Shown piece after piece: positions 23,856 to 61,519 of a stretch of 64,000 nucleotides of DNA. Location: contig NW_027271266.1 of NCBI RefSeq assembly GCF_040938485.1, forward strand, positions 434,001 through 498,000, given 5' to 3'. Source of the DNA: Diadema antillarum (taxonomy: Eukaryota). Below the pieces are notes generated by a model, which saw only the letters and a program-made list of their open reading frames with translations, did not search any database and had not been told where the DNA came from. A program made the position numbers and the translations under genes. Each line of letters begins with the position of its first letter. Position 1 is the first letter of the stretch.

Positions 23856-24111
23856 NNNNNNNNNNNNNNNNNNNNNNNNNNNNNNNNNNNNNNNNNNNNN
23901 NNNNNNNNNNNNNNNNNNNNNNNNNNNNNNNNNNNNNNNNNNNNNNNNNNNNNNNNNNNNNNNNNNNNNNNNNNNNNNNNNNNNNNNNNNNNNNNNNNNN
24001 NNNNNNNNNNNNNNNNNNNNNNNNNNNNNNNNNNNNNNNNNNNNNNNNNNNNNNNNNNNNNNNNNNNNNNNNNNNNNNNNNNNNNNNNNNNNNNNNNNNN
24101 NNNNNNNNNNN
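23856..24111. other. assembly gap (256 N)
   Basis: Run of N; the ORFs called across it are artefacts. Confidence 1.
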
Positions 24112-50440: not shown

Positions 50441-50814
50441 CTAAGGCATGCCAAGACAGGTGGAACTTTCAGAGCTGCTCTGGAAGAAGTTACACATGAT
50501 GTCATGAAGGTTGAGTACAGCAAACGCATACTCGCAATCCCGCTTCATCCGATAGCACACCTCTCGGCAAGGGAGTGGGCTCGGCTCCCGAGACCACGAC
50601 TCCGTCGAACCACTTTCCACGCAACCACTCGGGTAGGCTGTCGCGCAAATCAGCACCTTGGCTGCGTAGGGACTGCAGGCGACGTAAGCTTCAAGGAGAG
50701 ACCAAGAGGTGAAAAATGGCGTCGCCGAAGCTTCCACCAGCCCTTCCGATCTGTTATGTGGGAGAACCGCTCGACACTCGGATGGGATCAGTCGACAATC
50801 TCCAATAGTCCCAC
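50441..50814 (-). CDS. Frizzled-CRD/EGF protein, exon 8 (Frizzled CRD 2, terminal)
   Basis: Acceptor TTTTTGGACTTTTAG|GT. Ten cysteines: CRLIPSECRAVLPH...CSPYAAKVLICATAYPSGC...PLPCREVCYRMKRDC...MCNFFQSSSESSTCLGMP-stop (TAG at 50443-50441). Confidence 0.9.
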
Positions 50815-51315
50815 CTAAAAGTCCAAAAATAAAGTTCAGAGTTGATTTGCAGTGGTATAGCTATCAGTAGACAATGAGATTTCTAAACGAAATCATAGGT
50901 TTGTGTGATTATAATTATGCTGGATACGGATGAAGTTGTCTTCATTATCATACGAATAATATTCGGGTAAAATATTCATTATCGGAAGGATTATATTTAC
51001 GGGATATCAATACATTACAAGCGAAATTCGGCAGACCGTTCAGCATGAATAATTGCAAAGGCATCAAAATGTCTTGAAACCTTTATTTTGATTAATACTT
51101 TATGGACTTAATTATATTTTAGCTTGTGTACATCACTGGCATAGTGAATGGCTATAAACAACGATTCGTTTTTTATGACCGATTTTGATACAATCATGTA
51201 TAATCATGTGAACGTACGCATACAAAGTATTCATGTATATAGATTTTGATTCATCGAGATAGTATGATAAAAGCGTGTAAATTGAATCTGTTTGACTGGA
51301 CTTATTCGTGAAAAC

Positions 51316-51356
51316 GAGAACAGTTTCGTGACTCGTCCGAGTCACTTCTTCAGCTC
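51316..51356 (-). ncRNA. minimal type I hammerhead-ribozyme-like motif in the Penelope pseudo-LTR
   Basis: Minus strand GAG-CUGAAGA-A-GUGACUC-GGAC-GAGUCAC-GAAAC-U-GUU-CUC: core CUGANGA/GAAA, perfect 7-bp helix II, 3-bp helix I GAG/CUC, vestigial helix III. A degraded second copy lies on + at about 52564-52603. Confidence 0.65.
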
Positions 51357-51715
51357 TGGCTGGCTGGCGAGCATTCACACGTGTCGGGCGAATAGTCGAT
51401 GTTACTGCCTTTATTGTTTTTACGTCGAGGAATTTTCTCTCACCACCCACTTATCCACAAACTTGGAATTGTAAGGACTCTGTTTCACAGAGCATCCTAC
51501 CTCCGTTCTTCTACAGAGACGAAGAAAAGGGAATACCAACACCTGCCATGCCTGTGCACCGTCTTGAAAACATGCAGATTCAGAAACTGGAGCATTGAGA
51601 AAGCCCTTCACTCTCGAAAACGTGACGTCAAAGACAGGGCATCCAATACTAGCATATCCCAGAAACGAAGTAATGGCGTTTCGGATCGGTACTGCCAATG
51701 ACTATCAGAGGAAAT

Positions 51716-52070
51716 TTAAAGGGGATGGCTAGTAACTGATCAGTGGGAATCGGTGGGAATGCTGGGGGATGATTGTTCCAATTCTTGTGGGATTCATAAT
51801 TGTTGTGTGAATTATTATTTGCTTCAGAACTGTCTCATATTCAAGTAATGTGCAGTTTAATGCCCCGTCACTGTACAGGCATGCTAGCCTGGAACCATTA
51901 AACTGCACATTACTTTAATATGAGACCATTCTGAAGCAAATATTTTTTTTACACAATCATTGGATATAATATTATAATGTACTCTTAAATGAATCCCACA
52001 AGAATTGGAACAATCATCCCCCAGCATTCCCACTGATTCCCACTGATCAGTTACTAGCCATCCCCTTTAA
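51716..52070. mobile_element. near-perfect palindromic Kolobok-type MITE nested in the Penelope element
   Basis: TTAA-AGGGGATGGCTAGTAACTGATCAGTGGGAATC ... GATTCCCACTGATCAGTTACTAGCCATCCCCT-TTAA; the arms pair over most of the length. Confidence 0.9.
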
Positions 52071-52924
52071 CTATTTTTAGCTCATATACCGGATTCCTCT
52101 CTATACCTCAAGCCCGCCAACACTCTTCGACAGAAACTGGTACATGTACATCCAAAAGACAAAATTCCAAAACACAAACGGAACAATAAAATACCAGTAT
52201 ACAGGAATCAGTGCAAAGGAAAGGACTATAAAGACTAGTATCAATGGCGAGACCAAACAGCTTCTCCACAAACGTCTTTGCCAGCATTGCAGATCCGGAT
52301 CAGCGGGGAACGAATCTGCCGTGTTCACCCACCTGAACAACTCGGGGCACCATTTTGAGGACAAAGAAGTCAACATCATTGACAAGGAAACCAGATGGTT
52401 CGAAAGAGTAGTCCGCGAAAATCCTCGGGAAGGGCGACTCCGACACAACCTTCCACCAACATACAAGTCGGTGATCCGGAAAATTCCTCAACATACAGAC
52501 AGTAAAGGCAGTAACATCGCCCATTCACCCATACGGGTAAATTGAATGCTCGCCAGACAGACAGAGCTGAAGAATATTTAGTGACAAGTCATGAAACTGT
52601 TCCGTGATTTTCACAAGTAAGTACAGTCGAATTGATTCAGTTTTACACGCTTGTACGTATACAAAGTTACTGTAATCATTATCATGCATCTTCAATCTGA
52701 ACGTGGCAGCAAGTTCCCAAAAGTTATACATTCTTAAAGTAGAAGCATTAGAATGATTTCTTCAAACGTAATTATCTTAAAACAATTTCAAGTCATACTT
52801 GTTTTAGAGCGTGTGTATATTTAAGATTTCACTTCCATTTACGTCCATCCCTCTAACATACATGTACAATCACACATTCACACACACACACAAACACACA
52901 CACACACACATACTCTCTCTCCTT

Positions 52925-52959
<35 letters not shown>

Positions 52960-53203
52960 ACTCCTCGTTCTCCGTATCTCTTTTTCTTCTCGATGTTCTT
53001 TAAAAACTATAGCTGGAAGAACTATGACACAAATTCCACAAGATGGACGTTTCATTAGAGAGATATTGGGACCAAATTACATTATGATACCTTATTTTGA
53101 TAATTGTATAAAGATCACAGATATAGAAAAACAACCCAACTGACTTCAAAGATTTAAGATTCAAAGAGATTCAAAGATTCAAATCATTTGACGTGATACT
53201 CAC

Positions 53204-53254
53204 CGTTTGAAGGTAAAGATGGTTGTGACGAAGTGCTGTCGATGTTTGATAATC
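53204..53254 (-). CDS. Frizzled-CRD/EGF protein, exon 7 (short linker)
   Basis: Acceptor TTTTAACCTACAG|GA, donor AACG|GTGAGT, 51 nt, phase 1-1. Encodes GLSNIDSTSSQPSLPSN. Confidence 0.75.
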
Positions 53255-53574
53255 CTGTAGGTTAAAAGACGTACAATATACAGATAGGCTGTCAACGCAG
53301 GAAAAAGTTAGATATAATCGATTAGTATTCTTATCATTCATTCCCATGTCTTTAGGCTCGGACATTGTTCAAATAGCATTCTCATGAATGCAACACTAGT
53401 ACAGAAATGTTATATGAGATTTAAAGATAGTAGCTGTATCTTATTGATGTACAACTCAATTAGAAGTGAATATATTTCACTATTCGACTTCTGCATACTG
53501 CATGTACTGGATGATCCTTTGCGGGTGATGTGTCATTTGCATATCAGAGCGCAAAGTACGTGTGTAATAGTCAG

Positions 53575-53753
53575 CAGTGGCGGATCCAGAGGGGGGCGCA
53601 ACCGGCGCACGCCCCCCCCCCTTTTATTTTTTGTTAAAAACAAAAGAAATAAAAAGAAAAAAATGGAAATGAAACTCGGAAGTGGCACCAGAAATATTAG
53701 TCACGCCCCCCCCCCCCCCCCGCCCCTTTACAGAATTCCTGGATCCGCCCCTG
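53575..53753. mobile_element. hAT-like MITE
   Basis: CAGTGGCGGATCCAG ... CTGGATCCGCCCCTG, flanked by direct repeat GTCAG and followed by (GTT)n. Confidence 0.8.
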
Positions 53754-53758
53754 GTCAG

Positions 53759-53806
<48 letters not shown>

Positions 53807-54265
53807 TCAGTTCGAACTCTCATCGTCCCATGTCATTTTTTTCGAGAACGATTCTTGCCATAAGCAGTCCAACATAACCAGCAGCGATAGGAGGACGGAA
53901 GGAGAACAACACAAACTAATAAACTACAACAGCAACCACACGACAAAAAGGCGAACAAGAAGCTATCTCCATCAGAATTTATCGTAACTTAAAGATTTTG
54001 CACATCTCATTTCAATTCTGTTTTCCCTTTTCTTTTTCTTTTTCTTTTTTACCGTTGTGAAAGTGATGTTTAACTGACTTGGCAACAACGAATGCTTGTC
54101 AAACGGAATTGCAAGATTTATACAAACAGAACTGGTATGTCTGCGAAGCTCTCTGCTGGTTAGCTCATACTTAGATGGAAGAAAGATATGAATGCATTTT
54201 ATTGGATTATCTGTGTGAATAGTGAGTGTTCCCTGAAACACCCTATGAGCTCACGTGTCACTTAC

Positions 54266-54397
54266 CGCGTTCGCAATGGATCCCCTCATAGCCTGGTTGG
54301 CACAGGCACAGCACGGTTGCCGAGCCGAAGACAAGCCGATGGCTCACACAGGTCCCTCCATTAAGACAGGGGTGGCTATCACAGGGTTCGTCATATT
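54266..54397 (-). CDS. Frizzled-CRD/EGF protein, exon 6 (EGF-like domain 2)
   Basis: Acceptor TTCGTAG|AA, donor CGCG|GTAAGT, phase 1-1. Encodes YDEPCDSHPCLNGGTCVSHRLVFGSATVLCLCQPGYEGIHCER. Confidence 0.92.
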
Positions 54398-54918
54398 CTA
54401 CGAACGAGAACAACAAGACAAACCATGGGAAGGGGCAGCGCTAATGCATGAAATGGGGACAAAGATGGGACAAATCGTAGGAAAATGCCCCTAAGTCAAG
54501 CAGACGAAAGAGTCAATGAAACACAATATCTAGAAAGAAAAATGAATTCAAGGAAAAGCAGAATATTGAATACGAGCTTGCATACACGTTTTCCCCAGGT
54601 TGTTAGACAAATGCATTGGAAAGACCCAATAATTTGGTCTAAAAAATCAAGGAAATACAATCAACGACCATAAAGAAAAAACACTCGAGTAGTGTCATAT
54701 TTTGAATGTCATGTCAGCGGGTTGTACACAGTCCTTGTATATAATTATATTTTCTATATGATTTTGACTTTTACCAAATCGTAGCTACTGACATTTTATG
54801 AAAATTACATTTTTTTTAAATAAACCGTTTATCTTATACATGGTTTTCCAGATTGACAGTGATCGAGTCGTTTAATGTCTATTATATCTGATGTCAAAAA
54901 GTAAATGATAATACATAC

Positions 54919-55041
54919 TTTCCTGACAATGGATGCCATAAAATTGTCTCGGACATCGACAAATGGCTCTGTCGTTGACATGGAAACAAATCCCGCCATT
55001 TTCACACGTAACGGACGAACACGGAGAGTGCTGATCTGCTG
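54919..55041 (-). CDS. Frizzled-CRD/EGF protein, exon 5 (EGF-like domain 1)
   Basis: Acceptor CTCACTTCAG|CAG|CAG, donor GAAA|GTATGT, phase 1-1. Encodes SPCSSVTCENGGICFHVNDRAICRCPRQFYGIHCQE, a six-Cys EGF pattern. Too short for the supplied ORF track. Confidence 0.9.
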
Positions 55042-55693
55042 CTGAAGTGAGACAAGATAACTATAGTAAGAAAATTAATCATACACACAAGAAGGTCAGA
55101 ATAGAATAATTGTCCACATACTTCACGATTAAGTTTAAGATAAAAGCTATGCTCTGGAAAATTTCTTAAGTTGTAGGAGTGATGCCATAACGTCTTCAAT
55201 TTACAACAAAATTGATTTTTTTGCCTTCAGGCAACTTTTTCAATAGTCTCTGCTTTCACACATTGCAAAAGTGCATTATTTTCTAGTTAAAGCACGATTG
55301 ATGGTACATTTCTTCAAACAACGTCACACATAAACTGACATTGATTATAATTCATAATCATAGACGAAGTGTAACCTCCATATTCTTACAAACGTCGCAC
55401 GACGTAAGTTTCAAGTCCAGTTTCTGATTTATAAGAATTTGAACGTCACTCATTTTGTACTTTTGTTGGATATTCCTAATGTGTAACAAATGTCTTTCAC
55501 ATTTCAAACAATTGATCAGTTATTATGCTTCTTATGCTATGTTACTGTCACATCATGGTCAATGAGGCATACTGGCAAGCCAGATATATACTACATAGGT
55601 AACTATACTGTAGATGTGAAGGAGTATGATCACGTGAAGACTCTCGTTACTGATCTGCAAACACGATGATAATGACGCTTGGCAAGAAATTAC

Positions 55694-56089
55694 CAAGTGG
55701 TGAGGTGGACGTGTTACGAAAGCAGATGCTCTCATTTTCGGACTCTGGCATGGGTGTACAGAGATTCCCCCAAATCCTGATCGAGGAGGAGGAGGAGGAG
55801 GACGAGGTATTGACGACACATCGTGACAGGACGTCCTCGCAGAGCGAGCGACACGGGAGCGGGTGAAAGTTGTCGAAGTTCCGAAGAGCAAAGCACGGGG
55901 GGAAGATGATGCGGCACAGCAGGCGCTCCACAACCTCGGTGCGACAATCGCGGAGCACGTCGCCGGCGAGCTGGTGGTACAGCTGTGTGCCCTGTGTGAT
56001 CGTTTCGCTCAGATTGAATCGGTTCGGGAAGAAAGATGAGTCGTACGGTAGCAAGTCCCGGCACACTGCAACGGGGATCTCAGTGCAGT
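55694..56089 (-). CDS. Frizzled-CRD/EGF protein, exon 4 (Frizzled cysteine-rich domain 1)
   Basis: Acceptor GATTAG|AC, donor CTTG|GTAATT, 396 nt, phase 1-1. Ten cysteines in FZ spacing: CTEIPVAVCRDLLPY...CRTEVVERLLCRIIFPPC...PLPCRSLCEDVLSRC...CTPMPESENESIC. Confidence 0.92.
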
Positions 56090-57127
56090 CTAATCATTGA
56101 GAAACCAATTAACGAGCTTAATAACTAAAACACAAAGAAATCAACCATTAGGCCTACACGGTTTAGAGCGACTGTGAAATAGATTTTGGAATATTTTCTC
56201 CTTGAACGGTGATTTGACTTTGAGATCTGTGTCGAAGCAGATTGAATTAATTTTTGTGAAAAAAAAATACTTGTGGTAACAGCAAATTCTGCCCCTATTA
56301 CATCACATTTAGGCGAAATACCAGATAAGTTGCTGAACACACTGATTATCATGTATGTTTATTATGTTTATTCCGTTGATTTATCCGTTTACTTGTTAAT
56401 TGATTGACCCATCTCGGTGTTACGTGATTTCTCCGCCGTGGATGTTAATTTCTGAAGGAAAATTTTATCAAAATAAACACACTAAACATGCTAAACAAAT
56501 AATCACGACTATTATGACTGTGACTTATGACATATGTTTCCGAAAAAAACCCACACGTTATTTAAGATATGATAGAAAGCATTGTCTTGATAAACTTCAG
56601 CACTTAGGAGTAACTTTGTATTAACCATATTATATAATATTAAGTGGAGCATTAGAGAAGGGAAATCATGTAAAAACAAGGACTGCGCTGGAATGAGTGA
56701 TGTCATGTAGCCAAAGACTTATTATTCTTTTTAGACCGTATAGTAATTCACCATTTCAACCAGTGGACATCGCAATTCCTAATCGGAGATATAAAGTATG
56801 TAGGCCTTTTTTTTTGGTAGGTGTTGCAGAAGAGCTCAGGTAAATTGGGAATTCTACATCACAGTTAAAGCAATTGAAACTAGGGCAAATGAAGAATCAA
56901 GAAGTACATGCACTTCACATAACTGATGAAAATACACTTTAACCCGATAACGCTTTTGGATAATACTGAACATAGTTTTTCTCATTGCTTCTAATGGAAT
57001 GAATTTTCCATGTACTAAATACACCCGGCAGGGCTCTCCTGAAAAAAAAAATTCTCCATTTCACACCAACTTATTTTTATGCAAAACATTTGAACATGAA
57101 CAAAATAATTATGATTAATTCGGTCAC

Positions 57128-57238
57128 TTTCATGATCCTGCGTAAACGATGAATCGGTTGTCGACCAAGAGTCCGAACTGCTATCAAGCGGTGTCGGGGT
57201 GGTCGCCGATGAGTCCATCACAGTCGAAGGTGTCGGCA
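57128..57238 (-). CDS. Frizzled-CRD/EGF protein, exon 3 (Ser/Thr-rich stalk; boundaries uncertain)
   Basis: Encodes VPTPSTVMDSSATTPTPLDSSSDSWSTTDSSFTQDHE. Phase 1-1 with acceptor GACAG|TG and donor GAAA|GTGACC, both weak. An in-frame upstream acceptor near 57305 is also possible. Confidence 0.6.
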
Positions 57239-57715
57239 CTGTCAGCCAGTTGTGGTGTATACGAAGAGGCCACATGTTTCGGGTCAAAATGGGGGAGAGA
57301 TTGACTGCATCTCAGCTGGAAAATATTGGTATGCCAACTTGAAACTATTCTGCACACTTTCATATTCATTCACATGTTTTTCTATGATGTACTATAGACA
57401 TATTTATAGCCAATATATGATTATGGTCATTCACAATATTATGTTCCTCTCGTCATTGTAATACTCATATTTTGCATGTTTCTATCAATATATTTTTGTT
57501 TTGTCAAACACTGAGTTGTATTTTGTTTTACATTATCAGCGTAATTTCTGAATCGATACTGATTTTATATTTTCTTACACTTTAAATATCATGGATCCTT
57601 CTGGGCAGTCCTTGAAAAAAATGGTATGATGCTTCTTTAGTTGGTTGATTGATAATGTCCCTCACTTAACATGACATTCTCTTCATATTTTCTATTGTCG
57701 AGTTTCGTGTATTAC

Positions 57716-57886
57716 CGGGAAGGGTCGGTTGAGTACTTGGATACTGTATGAACGTAGGTGTCTCTGTTGACCATGTCTCAGTAGTTAGCGGCGGTGTTGC
57801 GCTGGCCATCGTTGCATCGGAACTAATCAATAGTATCTCCGCATCGGTAGAGGAGGCCTCTGTCATGCCCGGTGGCTGCAGATTGC
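57716..57886 (-). CDS. Frizzled-CRD/EGF protein, exon 2 (Ser/Thr/Pro-rich stalk)
   Basis: Acceptor ATTTTACAG|GC, donor CCCG|GTAATA, 171 nt, phase 1-1. Encodes GNLQPPGMTEASSTDAE...TPTFIQYPSTQPTLP. Confidence 0.8.
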
Positions 57887-58779
57887 CTGTAAAATCTGGC
57901 ATTCGGGTATGTTTAGCAGTTTAGGCATCCTCGACACAGAGTAATTAACTGACCGTGGAAATGCGACGAAGTACAGTATGATTATATTCTACTTATTATT
58001 CTTTTTATTCATGTTACATATTCCACATTTCATACAAGTTTCATATTTCATTTGATTTTGAAAAAGAAATGTTTTTAACGCAATGGTCAATTTGAACCCA
58101 AATTGCACAAATGTATAAGGACGTATAATTGACGTGTAATATGAGGAACCCACTAAAAAGCAAAGCTTGTAGGATGTGGGTTCCAAAAAATTGATATGAT
58201 ATAGACTTTTAGTACAGCATATCAATGTCAAAAGTGACGTAACATGCAAAAATACAAGATATCGAGAATAGATAAAGTTTACGGAATGCACAAAGTATTT
58301 TATGATGTTTATGATTAAACTTATGGTATCAATGCATAGAAAAGTAGCAAGTTGATCAAACTAATGAAGTCATCCGAGCGAGGCATCATTTGAGTATGCA
58401 GAAATTTTTCAAATGATTACGGCAAAATAATCAAACATAGGATTTTAGAAAATTGGCTTTGAGATTTTGCTTAAAGGAACTTTAAGAACTTGATTGCAAC
58501 CGAACCGAATCTAACTCATTCCAGAAAGAATGGTGGAGAATAAAAAAAAAGATAAGATTCCATCGGGATTTTCTTTGCTCATTTTTCCACAAGCAAAATT
58601 CATTTCTGGTCGGTTACTTATTTACACTCACCTGGAAAACTATTGGTTCTAGACCTCATGTCACTGTACACATAGCCATATCATTCTTTTTAGTTTCCAT
58701 ATAAAATAATCATGCATTCGTATATAGACCTGTTCGATTTGGGTGACTTGTTTCAATGTTTTTATCTATCTCAGCCATA

Positions 58780-58829
<50 letters not shown>

Positions 58830-59079
58830 GGGGGGGGGGGGGTAAGGGGCTTCAGTGTGCCTACCAACAATTGATTTATGCCCAGACATAGCAATCTGAC
58901 TCATTGCATAACATATTGGATCATTCTTTTCTTCTCAATTACTTTGGAAGCCCCCTATATATAGTACAAGTAGTAATGGCCAACACACGTTACAGTTTTA
59001 AAAACCAAATGGTCTGTATATTAAAGAAATCATTTCGTACAATTTATAAATAGTTTTGCTTCCTGTGAACGTAACTCAC

Positions 59080-59275
59080 CATGCAAGTGTACAAAGAGAA
59101 CAACAGCGACGACAGCAAGACTTGCTATCATACCAGCTATGGTGATGGATACCAACGCACGCACCACTCTCCTTCCGAGTTGCGAGCCCGACTTCACGGC
59201 AGCAGGGAGGTCGGGGACCACATCGCTGATGGAAGCATTGCGCACCTGCAGTTTGATATCTTGCTGGAATGCCAT
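59080..59275 (-). CDS. type II membrane Frizzled-CRD/EGF protein, exon 1 (cytoplasmic tail plus signal-anchor TM)
   Basis: ATG at 59275. MAFQQDIKLQ...LGRRVVRALVSITIAGMIASLAVVAVVLFVHLH has basic residues before a hydrophobic span. Donor CATG|GTGAGT, phase 1. Confidence 0.85.
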
Positions 59276-61519
59276 CTTGCGTCGATACTCGTAATGGCTC
59301 CGCTCGTGATCGTAGAATGGGTCAACTCGACGAGATTGTTTGACGTCACCTTCCGAGTTTAAAACCCATGCCTATATGTTTTGAATTGATATTTTGAAAG
59401 AGAAAAGTTGAGTAAAATCAGTTATGAGAGTAAAAACATTTGCAGCGGAAATTGTAGCAAAGGAGTGGGTAAACATAATAATAATTATGAATACCGTGAA
59501 GGGAGAATAGATCTATCCCAATTTATCCCACAGGCCAGAATTACAACAATTTGAGTAAAAATGCCGAAACTATAGCAACTATGGCGTTAAGTTGGATGCC
59601 CGTCAAAATAGATCTTGAACATTTCTCGTTTAAACATCCAGTTCTACTTATACTAGTCTAATATGTTTTAGACAAAATATAACTTCACACCACCAATCTT
59701 GATAGCCAACTACCACCGCGTCAGTAATGTAATACGTGATGGATGCATGTGTCAAGCCATGGACGAAAGTAGGCCTATATAAAAAATTCACAGAACACTG
59801 TCAAAAAAAAAAAAAAAGCTATAGAAAGCGCTCATGCGCCTGTCCTATCAGTCAGTGGTCTCATCAATACTATATCCATTTCGATTATCACCACTCCTGA
59901 TATAAGCAGTTATGATACGACTATCATCTCCATTTCTGGATTCAAATGCAAAGAGGAACCTAATACAATATACGACTCCATTTCTGCTGTCAGGTTCAAT
60001 ATGGGTTTGTTGTCAGAGCCCATTATACAGTCCTATTTTTGGCGCACTGTGAAAACATCCCGGTTGAAATTTAAACAGTCTCGTGACCTCACCGTATCAA
60101 AGGATCAGAAGCTTTCGCCAGTTATTTCGCGAAGGAACTCTCTCTCTCTCTCTCTCTCACATATACACATAAAAAATGTGAATTAAAGGCTGAACAGAAT
60201 GCTGTCACATAACAAAAATTATGTTGTCACATACAGTATGCCATCTGCTCATGATGCGTCATAATTTACACCGGTTTGAATCCTCTGATGAATGATATTC
60301 TTGCCATTACTAGTTCAGAAGTCAAAACCGAGAATCATGCTAAATACAGATTGCCGGACAAAATATTGTATCTTACCTTTCTTTAGGCTCACGTAATTTT
60401 TTCTTTTCACAAGCATGACAAGGAAAATCTGAATTTTAGATTATAGAACAGTTTGCTTGAAACTCTAAAGATATGGAGCCCGGAAGAAAATGTTGTTCAT
60501 CTTGATTTTAGCAGGATCCAATACGCAGCACAAGTGCTAATCGCGTCTCGTTCATTCTATCTTTGGCAATGTGATTATTGCAATAAGATTATATTCTTTG
60601 AACTATAATGCACAAACGGTAAATATAGAAAAAAAAGAAATAAATGTAACTCTTAAGAATAGAAAACACAAAATTGTATGAGCTTAATGTTTGCCTTAAT
60701 CATTTGCTTTAATTCATACAAATCTTTCCATCAGATTCGACTTATCTTTCCATGATAATGAATAATCATACACAAATGAAATAACGTCAATAGGGAGTAA
60801 CAAAAATATACACTAGTGTAAACAATACAAACTATAGGACAGACTTTCTTAAATAAAATTATGAAATCATAAGCAAAAAGCATTCTACATGGAATCATCA
60901 TGGAGAGAAACCTGAAAAAAAAAACTCCATAGATTGTAAAGTAAAGATTAATCTGAGTTGACGTAATGGCCAGAAGGAAATGAACATACTATAAAGTAAT
61001 GACTTTTTCCAAGAATACTTTTCCTTCTTTGAAGTAACCACATGATCCTGCATACGCTGAATCAAAGTGTATTTTGATTTGAGAGTACGAGTGATATTCT
61101 CTATTCCGAAGATTCGTTAAAAACTATCGATTTCTACTTATCGAATAGTCCTGCAGTTTGCTTTCAAATTACAAATAATACTTGATTGGGGACTGTTTTA
61201 CATTATAGATAGTATAAGGAATTCCAGAATAAGCACTGATAAGGGACAAGAATAAATCATTTTTTTTTTTTTTTTGCTTAATTGGGTTCTCCACAAAAGG
61301 AAATGAAGAGATGATGATGATAATAATTGGTCCGATAAGAAGTTGAAAGAATGTGATTCCAAACCATTACACGAAACAAATATTTTTTCTTTTCTTATAT
61401 CAGATTAGAGAGCTGGTCGGTGAACCAATCGAATTACAAGGCCTAATTCCCCCCCCCCCCCATGCCACGATGAGATTTTCTTTTCCAAAAAAAATATGAT
61501 TATTAATGCGATTAAAAGC

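What the first reader, a model, noticed from the sequence alone, without database searches (positions are those of the whole stretch)
50441..59275. Type II membrane protein with an unrecognised TM-stalk-FZ-EGF-EGF-FZ architecture: candidate membrane-tethered Wnt-binding decoy or presenter
Seen: eight exons joined by phase-1 GT-AG introns give one open frame of 1554 nt (517 aa). It encodes a short tail, a signal-anchor TM preceded by basic residues, an S/T/P-rich stalk, a complete 10-Cys Frizzled CRD, two 6-Cys EGF modules, a linker and a second 10-Cys CRD, then a stop. Established: Frizzled CRDs bind Wnt (Frizzled, sFRP, ROR, MuSK). The type II CRD proteins I know are corin (FZ, LDLa, SR, serine protease) and MFRP (CUB, LDLa, FZ). 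This protein has no protease, LDLa, CUB, kinase or 7TM part. Inference: it is a lineage-specific, exon-shuffled cell-surface protein holding two CRDs on a stalk, able to trap, present or bridge Wnt-like lipidated ligands. Both EGF exons and the linker exon are missing from the ORF track, so automated annotation may have missed or split it.
Basis: partly seen in the sequence, partly recalled or inferred. Interest (0 to 1): 0.75.

Follow-up and report, generated by a model that had tools for sequence, protein, structure and literature searches.

The report
Echinoderm membrane protein with two Frizzled-type domains
This is a real gene of the sea urchin Diadema antillarum, conserved across echinoderms, for a membrane-anchored surface protein with two Frizzled-type and two EGF domains; public databases already predict it but nobody has studied it, and binding to Wnt is unproven.

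Summary
Observation confirmed. All introns are GT-AG and phase 1, and no exon has an internal stop. Pfam finds Fz in exon 4 and EGF in exons 5 and 6. The last exon is a divergent Fz domain, supported by profile, cysteine and fold evidence.

The window is Diadema antillarum contig JBFRCO010000378.1. RefSeq already predicts the gene:
- On this contig the model is truncated (379 aa, ends after EGF1).
- On the allelic haplotig the model is full length (522 aa: FZ-EGF-EGF-FZ).

Orthologues with the same layout exist in D. setosum, Lytechinus, S. purpuratus (LOC100889782) and the brittle star Amphiura, which adds a SEA domain. Starfish and sea cucumber have variants. All models end just after the second Fz domain, so there is no protease or 7TM part.

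Wnt binding is untested. In CRD1 most residues that line the Fz8 acyl channel are replaced by polar or charged ones. The gene evolves fairly fast (dN/dS about 0.45 between the two Diadema species). No RNA run was listed.

Verdict: a new variant among Fz-domain mosaic proteins, of moderate interest. The scan holds no other note on this gene.

The parts
59080..59371 (-). Coding exon 1: cytoplasmic tail and signal-anchor transmembrane helix (about 59158-59090).
   Evidence: It matches P0047 and P0001 exactly. Arg-rich N-flank (GRRVVR) and an acidic C-flank. There is no N-terminal signal peptide. The annotated start exon (MEVQMKQ) lies 53-73 nt beyond the window end.
57716..57895 (-). Stalk exon 2, 48% Ser/Thr/Pro.
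57128..57238 (-). Stalk exon 3, 61% Ser/Thr/Pro. Alternatively included.
   Evidence: Present in P0047 and in the D. setosum model P0046, skipped in P0001. Its splice sites are conserved in D. setosum.
55694..56089 (-). Exon 4: first Frizzled-type cysteine-rich domain (CRD1), 10 Cys.
   Evidence: Pfam Fz 46.1 bits. Best solved relative is the Fz8 CRD, E 8e-5. Orthologues are 44-47% identical in camarodont urchins.
54919..55041 (-). Exon 5: EGF module 1, 6 Cys.
   Evidence: Pfam EGF 22.8 bits.
54513..54529 (-). Alternative terminal exon (encodes NIVFH then stop) used by the RefSeq model on this contig. It gives a truncated TM-stalk-FZ-EGF1 product.
   Evidence: The sequence is identical on the other haplotig. 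It could not be aligned in D. setosum.
54266..54397 (-). Exon 6: EGF module 2, 6 Cys.
   Evidence: Pfam EGF 37.1 bits.
53204..53254 (-). Exon 7: 17-codon Ser/Thr/Pro linker.
   Evidence: Found as a phase-1/phase-1 candidate. It matches P0001. It is a separate exon in D. setosum and S. purpuratus too.
50441..50814 (-). Exon 8: second, divergent Frizzled-type domain (CRD2), 10 Cys, then stop TAG at 50443-50441.
   Evidence: Pfam Fz 25.9 bits, E 1.5e-5. hhalign against CRD1 gives 93.8%. The family profile's 37 best PDB hits are all Frizzled or sFRP3 CRDs, best E 4e-4; ROR2 and MuSK Fz domains and a bacterial CdiI follow at E 0.35 or weaker. The AF2 model has pLDDT 78.7 and matches FZD5/8/7, MuSK and Sizzled CRDs.

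Best explanation
This is the Diadema antillarum member of an echinoderm-wide family of single-pass type II surface glycoproteins.

Anatomy. An N-terminal cytoplasmic tail leads into a signal-anchor helix. A Ser/Thr/Pro-rich stalk, presumably O-glycosylated, follows. The stalk holds an ectodomain of Fz CRD, EGF, EGF, short linker and a second, divergent Fz CRD. The protein ends a few residues after the last cysteine. Each module sits on its own phase-1 exon.

Mechanism. It has no catalytic, kinase or 7TM part, and its tail is poorly conserved. It therefore most likely works as a passive binding or scaffold protein at the cell surface. The two Fz-fold domains would hold an extracellular partner: a hydrophobic or lipid-bearing ligand, or a protein. 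The stalk would set the distance from the membrane.

Shown here: the gene structure, the domains, the conservation, and the topology signals in the sequence.

Inferred: surface location, glycosylation, and a binding function. The ligand is unknown. I put about one chance in four on Wnt.
For: Gene model: arithmetic and splice sites are exact.

Public models:
- The window is 100% identical to contig JBFRCO010000378.1.
- RefSeq models P0047 (this contig) and P0001 (allelic haplotig, 99.4% identical) carry the same exons.

Orthologues with the same order of modules:
- D. setosum, Lytechinus pictus and L. variegatus, S. purpuratus LOC100889782.
- Amphiura filiformis: TM-SEA-mucin-FZ-EGF-EGF-FZ.
- Holothuria: FZ-EGF-FZ.
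- Patiria: TM-SEA-EGF2-FZ-EGF2.

Constraint:
- S. purpuratus has one domain per exon.
- All splice sites are kept in D. setosum, with dN/dS 0.45.

CRD2 is an Fz domain. In addition, Holothuria lost C3 and C8 together, which are the known C3-C8 disulfide pair (pairing from PMC6938638).

Topology: basic residues precede the helix, acidic residues follow it, and all cysteine-rich modules lie after it.
Against: - No RNA evidence could be obtained; none was listed.
- All public proteins are computed models.
- The only model on this very contig is a truncated isoform.
- dN/dS of 0.45, and 35-40% identity between Diadema and Strongylocentrotus, show loose constraint.
- No binding partner is indicated by any result.
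- The AF2 model of CRD2 became confident only after generic Fz domains were added to the alignment, which biases it towards that fold.
Confidence: 0.6

Rival explanations
1. The protein is a membrane-tethered Wnt-binding decoy, presenter or bridge: one or both CRDs take up the Wnt acyl chain as Frizzled and sFRP CRDs do.
For: - Both domains have the Fz fold or signature.
- The nearest solved relatives are Wnt-binding FZD CRDs.
- CRD2 keeps hydrophobic residues at the positions aligned with Fz8 M122, Y125 and F127.
Against: The Fz8 acyl channel is formed by Q71, F72, P74, I78, M122, Y125, F127 and P130 (PMC6873803).

CRD1:
- It keeps Q71 and a hydrophobic residue at F72.
- Y125 is Phe in S. purpuratus but Ser in Diadema.
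- P74, I78, M122 and F127 carry Gly/Ser, Arg/Thr, Ser/Asp and Arg/Asp.
- An Asp is invariant at the L75 position.

CRD2 lacks the Trp-Pro step.

Fz domains of corin, MuSK and others have non-Wnt roles (my own knowledge). The fast evolution is unlike core Wnt components. The alignment in the second half of the domain is uncertain.
Confidence: 0.22
2. A protease-less relative of the type II serine-protease or corin-type stem. The Fz and EGF modules would recruit a substrate or partner for another enzyme, or act in adhesion or matrix binding, and the ectodomain might be shed.
For: - The brittle-star and starfish relatives carry a SEA domain next to the membrane helix. SEA domains are typical of type II proteases and mucins (my own knowledge).
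- Many sea urchin Fzl-CRD proteins are membrane serine proteases.
- A crinoid hit is Fz-CUB-trypsin.
- Corin has two Fz domains separated by small disulfide modules (my own knowledge).
Against: - No orthologue has a protease domain.
- The tree does not place CRD1 or CRD2 with a protease-linked Fz domain with support.
- Echinoid members have no SEA domain.
Confidence: 0.13
3. A gene-prediction artefact or decaying pseudogene: the exons are chance open frames or a dead copy.
For: There is no RNA evidence here. The model on this contig is truncated. Constraint is loose.
Against: - Eight exons stay in frame with conserved splice sites in two Diadema species.
- The same exon-domain plan is found in S. 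purpuratus.
- All 32 domain cysteines are intact.
- The architecture is conserved as far as brittle stars.
Confidence: 0.03

Closest known systems
Corin (type II membrane serine protease with two Fz domains)
   Same: Type II signal anchor. Two Fz-type CRDs separated by small disulfide-rich modules.
   Different: Here the spacers are EGF rather than LDLa. There is no scavenger-receptor or trypsin domain, and the protein ends right after CRD2.
MFRP (membrane frizzled-related protein)
   Same: Type II membrane protein with an Fz CRD at the very C-terminus and no enzymatic part.
   Different: MFRP has CUB and LDLa modules and a single CRD. This protein has EGF modules, a mucin-like stalk and two CRDs.
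Secreted Frizzled-related proteins, including sea urchin sFRP-1 (four CRDs plus Ig; PMC5778778)
   Same: Non-7TM proteins built around Fz CRDs. Sea urchin sFRP-1 is a lineage-specific multi-CRD protein.
   Different: Those are secreted through a signal peptide and have NTR or Ig modules. This one is membrane-anchored, has EGF modules, and is not in that paper's list of sea urchin CRDs.
Frizzled receptors (FZD5, FZD7, FZD8 CRDs)
   Same: Closest solved structures by sequence for both domains, and by fold for CRD2, which was the only one modelled. Same 10-Cys pattern.
   Different: No 7TM part. Only 18-25% identity. Acyl-channel residues are mostly replaced in CRD1.
Echinoderm relatives: Amphiura XP_072038049.1, Patiria XP_038051955.1, S. 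purpuratus LOC100889782
   Same: True family members: type II helix, stalk, and the FZ-EGF-EGF(-FZ) core.
   Different: The brittle-star and starfish forms have a SEA domain. The Patiria isoform seen has EGF-EGF on both sides of one Fz and no second Fz.

Membership tests
Fz domain (Pfam PF01392), CRD1 (exon 4) | Score above Pfam gathering cut-off | tested here: met
   46.1 bits against 32.1.
Fz domain (Pfam PF01392), CRD1 (exon 4) | Ten cysteines spaced CnCnCX8CX6CnCX3CX6-7CnCnC (pattern as quoted in PMC6938638) | tested here: met
   Ten Cys. X6, X3 and X6 are exact. C3-C4 is 9 residues in Diadema and 8 in S. purpuratus.
Fz domain (Pfam PF01392), CRD2 (exon 8) | Score above Pfam gathering cut-off | tested here: not met
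   25.9 bits against 32.1, E 1.5e-5. Orthologues score two Fz stretches.
Fz domain (Pfam PF01392), CRD2 (exon 8) | Ten cysteines with CX3C and CX6C spacing, and the Fz disulfide topology | tested here: met
   - Ten Cys align with the Fz cysteine columns.
- C6-X3-C7-X6-C8 is exact.
- Holothuria lost C3 and C8 together.
Fz domain (Pfam PF01392), CRD2 (exon 8) | Fz fold | tested here: met
   - hhalign against CRD1: 93.8%.
- The family profile's 37 best PDB hits are all Frizzled or sFRP3 CRDs, best E 4e-4.
- The AF2 model (pLDDT 78.7) matches FZD, MuSK and Sizzled CRDs with TM 0.55-0.61.
- Caveat: the alignment given to AF2 contained Fz domains.
EGF-like domain (PF00008) | Six cysteines and a score above the cut-off | tested here: met
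   Exon 5 scores 22.8 and exon 6 scores 37.1, against 21.5. Six Cys each.
Wnt-binding CRD (Frizzled/sFRP type) | Hydrophobic acyl channel (Fz8 Q71, F72, P74, I78, M122, Y125, F127, P130; PMC6873803) | tested here: not met
   This status applies to CRD1. About 3 of the 8 channel positions are kept (plus neighbouring Trp129), and Arg/Asp sit at the I78 and F127 positions. CRD2 is inconclusive: hydrophobic at three positions, no Trp-Pro step, and the alignment is uncertain.
Wnt-binding CRD (Frizzled/sFRP type) | Direct binding of a Wnt | not testable with these tools
   Needs protein biochemistry.
Frizzled receptor | Seven-transmembrane part after the CRD | tested here: not met
   There is one helix, N-terminal to the CRDs, and a stop right after CRD2.
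sFRP | Signal peptide, single CRD, NTR module | tested here: not met
   A signal anchor instead of a signal peptide, and no NTR hit.
Corin | LDLa repeats, SRCR and trypsin protease domain | tested here: not met
   None found by Pfam in the exons or in P0001/P0005.
MFRP | CUB and LDLa modules | tested here: not met
   None found.
Type II (N-in) single-pass membrane protein | Internal hydrophobic helix without an N-terminal signal peptide, with positive charges on the N-side | tested here: met
   Read directly from exon 1 and from the orthologues. The topology itself has not been shown by experiment.
Echinoderm SEA-bearing relatives | SEA domain after the helix | tested here: not met
   No SEA hit in exons 2 or 3 or in the echinoid proteins. 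SEA is present in Amphiura and Patiria.

The most novel reading that the evidence does not exclude
The family is an echinoderm-wide, membrane-tethered modulator of Wnt (or another lipid-modified morphogen). Two unlike CRDs on a mucin stalk would let one molecule hold or bridge ligands at the cell surface. That would make it a so far unnoticed component of the Wnt network that patterns the sea urchin embryo.
Probability: 0.2. Interest if true: 0.65.

Novelty: new variant of a known kind. Interest (0 to 1): 0.35.

Why it matters
Sea urchin embryos are a main model for Wnt-driven axis patterning. One lineage-specific multi-CRD protein, sFRP-1, has already proved to be a working Wnt modulator (PMC5778778). 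A second, membrane-anchored family that is conserved from urchins to brittle stars, and absent from that published list of sea urchin CRD proteins, is a concrete candidate to test.

If it does not bind Wnt, it is still a clean example of Fz domains acting as shuffled modules: one module per phase-1 exon, with the SEA domain present in some echinoderm classes and absent in others.

The practical result for annotation is that the model on this contig is truncated, and that the Lytechinus orthologues are misnamed as Notch-like.

Tried and rejected
- RNA evidence: the look-up of sequencing runs listed no run, so read laying could not be used.
- Joined product: I did not search or fold the joined 517-aa product. 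I worked exon by exon and used the public model of the allelic haplotig (P0001) as a stand-in.
- CRD2 against PDB as a single sequence: nothing useful.
- CRD2 folded with a 6-sequence alignment: poor model (pLDDT 54.5) and no significant Foldseek hits.
- Word-indexed search restricted to CRD2: only Diadema found.
- Word-indexed search with the family alignment: swamped by EGF-rich proteins, no new members.
- Logan members of the S. purpuratus cluster: single-exon ORFs that run past the CRD1 exon end, so most likely genomic reads and no evidence of splicing.
- Literature:
  - LOC100889782 appears in no searchable paper.
  - Pei and Grishin 2012 and Croce et al. 2006 are not held.
  - Yan et al. 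2014 was not looked up.
- Tree of 42 Fz domains: it does not show CRD1 and CRD2 as sisters, so an internal duplication is not supported.
- Other ORFs: Pfam found nothing in the intronic ORF at 52144-52545 or in the ORFs lying within the neighbour gene's span.
Full report
**What is there**

On the minus strand between 59371 and 50441 there is a multi-exon gene. Stop-to-stop scanning and reading of the sequence gave eight exons:

| Exon | Coordinates | Content |
|---|---|---|
| 1 | 59275-59080 | tail and membrane helix |
| 2 | 57886-57716 | stalk |
| 3 | 57238-57128 | stalk |
| 4 | 56089-55694 | CRD1 |
| 5 | 55041-54919 | EGF1 |
| 6 | 54397-54266 | EGF2 |
| 7 | 53254-53204 | linker |
| 8 | 50814-50441 | CRD2 and stop |

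An exon-wise check gave these results:
- Every internal exon is a multiple of three.
- Every intron is GT-AG and phase 1.
- No exon has an internal stop, and no split codon is a stop.

All searches used single exons by reference, or public proteins.

**Domains**

Pfam on the single exons gave:
- exon 4: Fz, 46.1 bits (cut-off 32.1)
- exon 5: EGF, 22.8 bits (cut-off 21.5)
- exon 6: EGF, 37.1 bits (cut-off 21.5)
- exon 8: Fz, 25.9 bits, E 1.5e-5, below the cut-off
- exons 1 to 3: nothing

The two stalk exons are 48% and 61% Ser/Thr/Pro.

Exon 1 carries a 23-residue hydrophobic helix. An Arg-rich stretch precedes it and an acidic stretch follows it. The N-terminus is hydrophilic, so there is no signal peptide. 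All cysteine-rich modules lie after the helix. This is the signature of a type II signal anchor. The topology is inferred from the sequence, not shown by experiment.

**Is the second domain really an Fz domain?**

As a single sequence it finds nothing in the PDB. Five lines of evidence support it:
- A profile of CRD2 from five species finds Frizzled and sFRP3 CRDs as its 37 best PDB hits, best E 4e-4. ROR2 and MuSK Fz domains and a bacterial CdiI follow only at E 0.35 or weaker.
- Profile-profile comparison with the CRD1 family gives 93.8% probability.
- All ten cysteines fall in the Fz cysteine columns in a 42-domain alignment.
- The C6-X3-C7-X6-C8 spacing is canonical (pattern quoted in PMC6938638).
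- The sea cucumber CRD2 has lost C3 and C8 together. These two form one disulfide in the Fz fold.

The structure prediction needs a caveat. AlphaFold2 with six sequences gave a poor model (pLDDT 54.5). With the 42-domain alignment it gave pLDDT 78.7. Foldseek then returned FZD5, FZD8 and FZD7, MuSK, Sizzled and sFRP3 CRDs at probability about 1.0 and TM 0.55-0.61. That alignment contained Fz domains, so the fold result is supportive, not independent.

**Whose gene is it, and is it annotated?**

An exhaustive HMMER search with CRD1 found 41 proteins. The best is a 522-aa protein, XP_071487554.1, an 'uncharacterized protein' of Diadema antillarum.

The window is 100% identical to D. antillarum contig JBFRCO010000378.1. 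Two RefSeq models cover the gene:
- **This contig:** XP_071496004.1, 379 aa. It uses exons 1 to 5 and then a short alternative terminal exon at 54529-54513. It therefore lacks EGF2, the linker and CRD2.
- **The second contig:** the 522-aa model lies on a contig that is 99.4% identical over the whole locus, so I read it as the allelic haplotig. It has the full FZ-EGF-EGF-FZ order but skips exon 3.

Both models start at an ATG in a further 5' exon, 53-73 nt beyond the window end. That exon is spliced in phase 0 to an extension of exon 1 that reaches 59371.

The model at this locus is truncated, but the complete architecture is in RefSeq.

**Conservation**

Family members found:

| Species | Protein | Layout |
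|---|---|---|
| D. setosum | 523 aa, includes exon 3 | same order of modules |
| Lytechinus pictus and L. variegatus | 538 aa, named 'neurogenic locus notch homolog protein 2-like' | same order |
| S. purpuratus | LOC100889782, 531 and 508 aa isoforms | same order |
| Amphiura filiformis (brittle star) | XP_072038049.1, 804 aa | TM, SEA, Thr-rich stalk, FZ, EGF, EGF, FZ |
| Holothuria | 327 aa, looks partial | FZ-EGF-FZ |
| Patiria | isoform X4, 556 aa | TM-SEA-EGF-EGF-FZ-EGF-EGF |

All members that have CRD2 end within about seven residues of its last cysteine. No protease or 7TM extension is hidden downstream.

S. purpuratus has the same one-domain-per-exon plan. Between the two Diadema species all splice sites are kept. 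Summed over exons, dN/dS is 0.45 (dS 0.13). Non-coding identity is about 73-93%.

The family is thus real, old and under moderate constraint. Its presence in echinoids, a holothurian and an ophiuroid implies the eleutherozoan ancestor had it; the class relationships are my own knowledge.

Beyond echinoderms, the CRD1 search found only generic Fz-repeat proteins, whose high scores come from many summed repeats. Examples are a hemichordate polycystin-like protein with 12 Fz and 19 LDLa, and amphioxus giants.

**Function**

Nothing tested here shows Wnt binding. The Fz8 acyl channel is formed by Q71, F72, P74, I78, M122, Y125, F127 and P130, with W129 close by (PMC6873803).

- **CRD1.** From the Fz8 alignment and the family alignments, it keeps Q71 and a hydrophobic residue at F72, and neighbouring W129 as well. 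Y125 is Phe in S. purpuratus but Ser in Diadema. P74, I78, M122 and F127 carry Gly/Ser, Arg/Thr, Ser/Asp and Arg/Asp. There is also an invariant Asp at the L75 position.
- **CRD2.** It is hydrophobic at the M122, Y125 and F127 positions but lacks the Trp-Pro step.
- **Caveat.** The alignment is uncertain in the second half of the domain, so this is suggestive only.

The family is also much less conserved than I would expect of core Wnt components.

[quoted passage not shown] The present protein is not in that paper's table of CRD sequences.

I therefore favour a generic reading: a passive, stalked binding or scaffold protein at the cell surface with an unknown partner. I give Wnt about 0.2-0.25. 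A corin-like or TTSP-stem-like role is a further rival, suggested by the SEA domain in brittle star and starfish relatives.

**Comparison with known proteins**

The closest known designs are:
- corin: type II, two Fz domains separated by small disulfide modules, but with LDLa, SRCR and a protease
- MFRP: type II, C-terminal Fz, but with CUB and LDLa
- sFRPs: secreted, with an NTR module

No defining accessory domain of any of these is present. I found no paper describing the TM-(SEA)-stalk-FZ-EGF-EGF-FZ order. The key surveys (Pei and Grishin 2012, Croce et al. 2006) were not held, and Yan et al. 2014 was not looked up. Absence from the literature is therefore not established.

**Verdict**

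This is a new variant within the known class of Fz-domain mosaic proteins. It is already present as uncharacterised or misnamed database models, and its interest is moderate.

Noticed in passing
window 59024-56439 (compared with L002 10074-27594): The allelic haplotig carries a 2.6-kb tandem duplication of this stretch, which holds stalk exons 2 and 3. Both exons are multiples of three and phase 1, so the stalk could differ in length between haplotypes. It could also be an assembly artefact.
   Followed up: partly
window 54529-54513, minus strand: A short alternative terminal exon (five codons, then a stop) is used by the RefSeq model on this contig. It would give a truncated TM-stalk-FZ-EGF1 product. 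The sequence is identical on the other haplotig, but it could not be aligned in D. setosum.
   Followed up: partly
about 53-73 nt beyond the window end (L001 10001-10021): The annotated start codon and first seven codons of the gene lie just outside the window.
   Followed up: yes
window about 42211-38951, minus strand: The next gene downstream on the same strand is a 514-aa MATCAP-domain protein, according to the precomputed Pfam hit on the allelic locus. The ORFs I scanned here gave no Pfam hit.
   Followed up: partly
P0034 (Amphiura filiformis XP_072038049.1) and P0013 (Patiria miniata): The brittle-star and starfish relatives have a SEA domain between the membrane helix and the stalk. Echinoid members have none, so the SEA domain was lost or gained within echinoderms.
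   Followed up: partly
P0019:210-327 (Holothuria leucospilota): The second Fz domain of the sea cucumber protein lacks cysteines 3 and 8 together. These are the two partners of one Fz disulfide.
   Followed up: yes
P0048, P0070 (Lytechinus pictus and L. variegatus): The orthologues are named 'neurogenic locus notch homolog protein 2-like' in RefSeq, evidently because of the two EGF modules. The name is misleading.
   Followed up: no
window 54397-54266 (EGF2): EGF2 has the C2-x4-Thr-C3 motif in all urchin orthologues. I recall this as the O-fucosylation consensus of Notch-type EGF modules. This was not checked against a source.
   Followed up: no
window about 58790-58850, about 52860-52960, about 53750-53810; 23856-24111: Dinucleotide (CA/TG and GA/TC) and trinucleotide microsatellites lie in introns 1 and 7. 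There is a 256-base run of N further upstream in the window.
   Followed up: no
P0002 (Ptychodera flava XP_070577742.1): A hemichordate polycystin-1-like protein (REJ, GPS, PLAT, PKD channel) carries 12 Fz and 19 LDLa repeats in its ectodomain.
   Followed up: no
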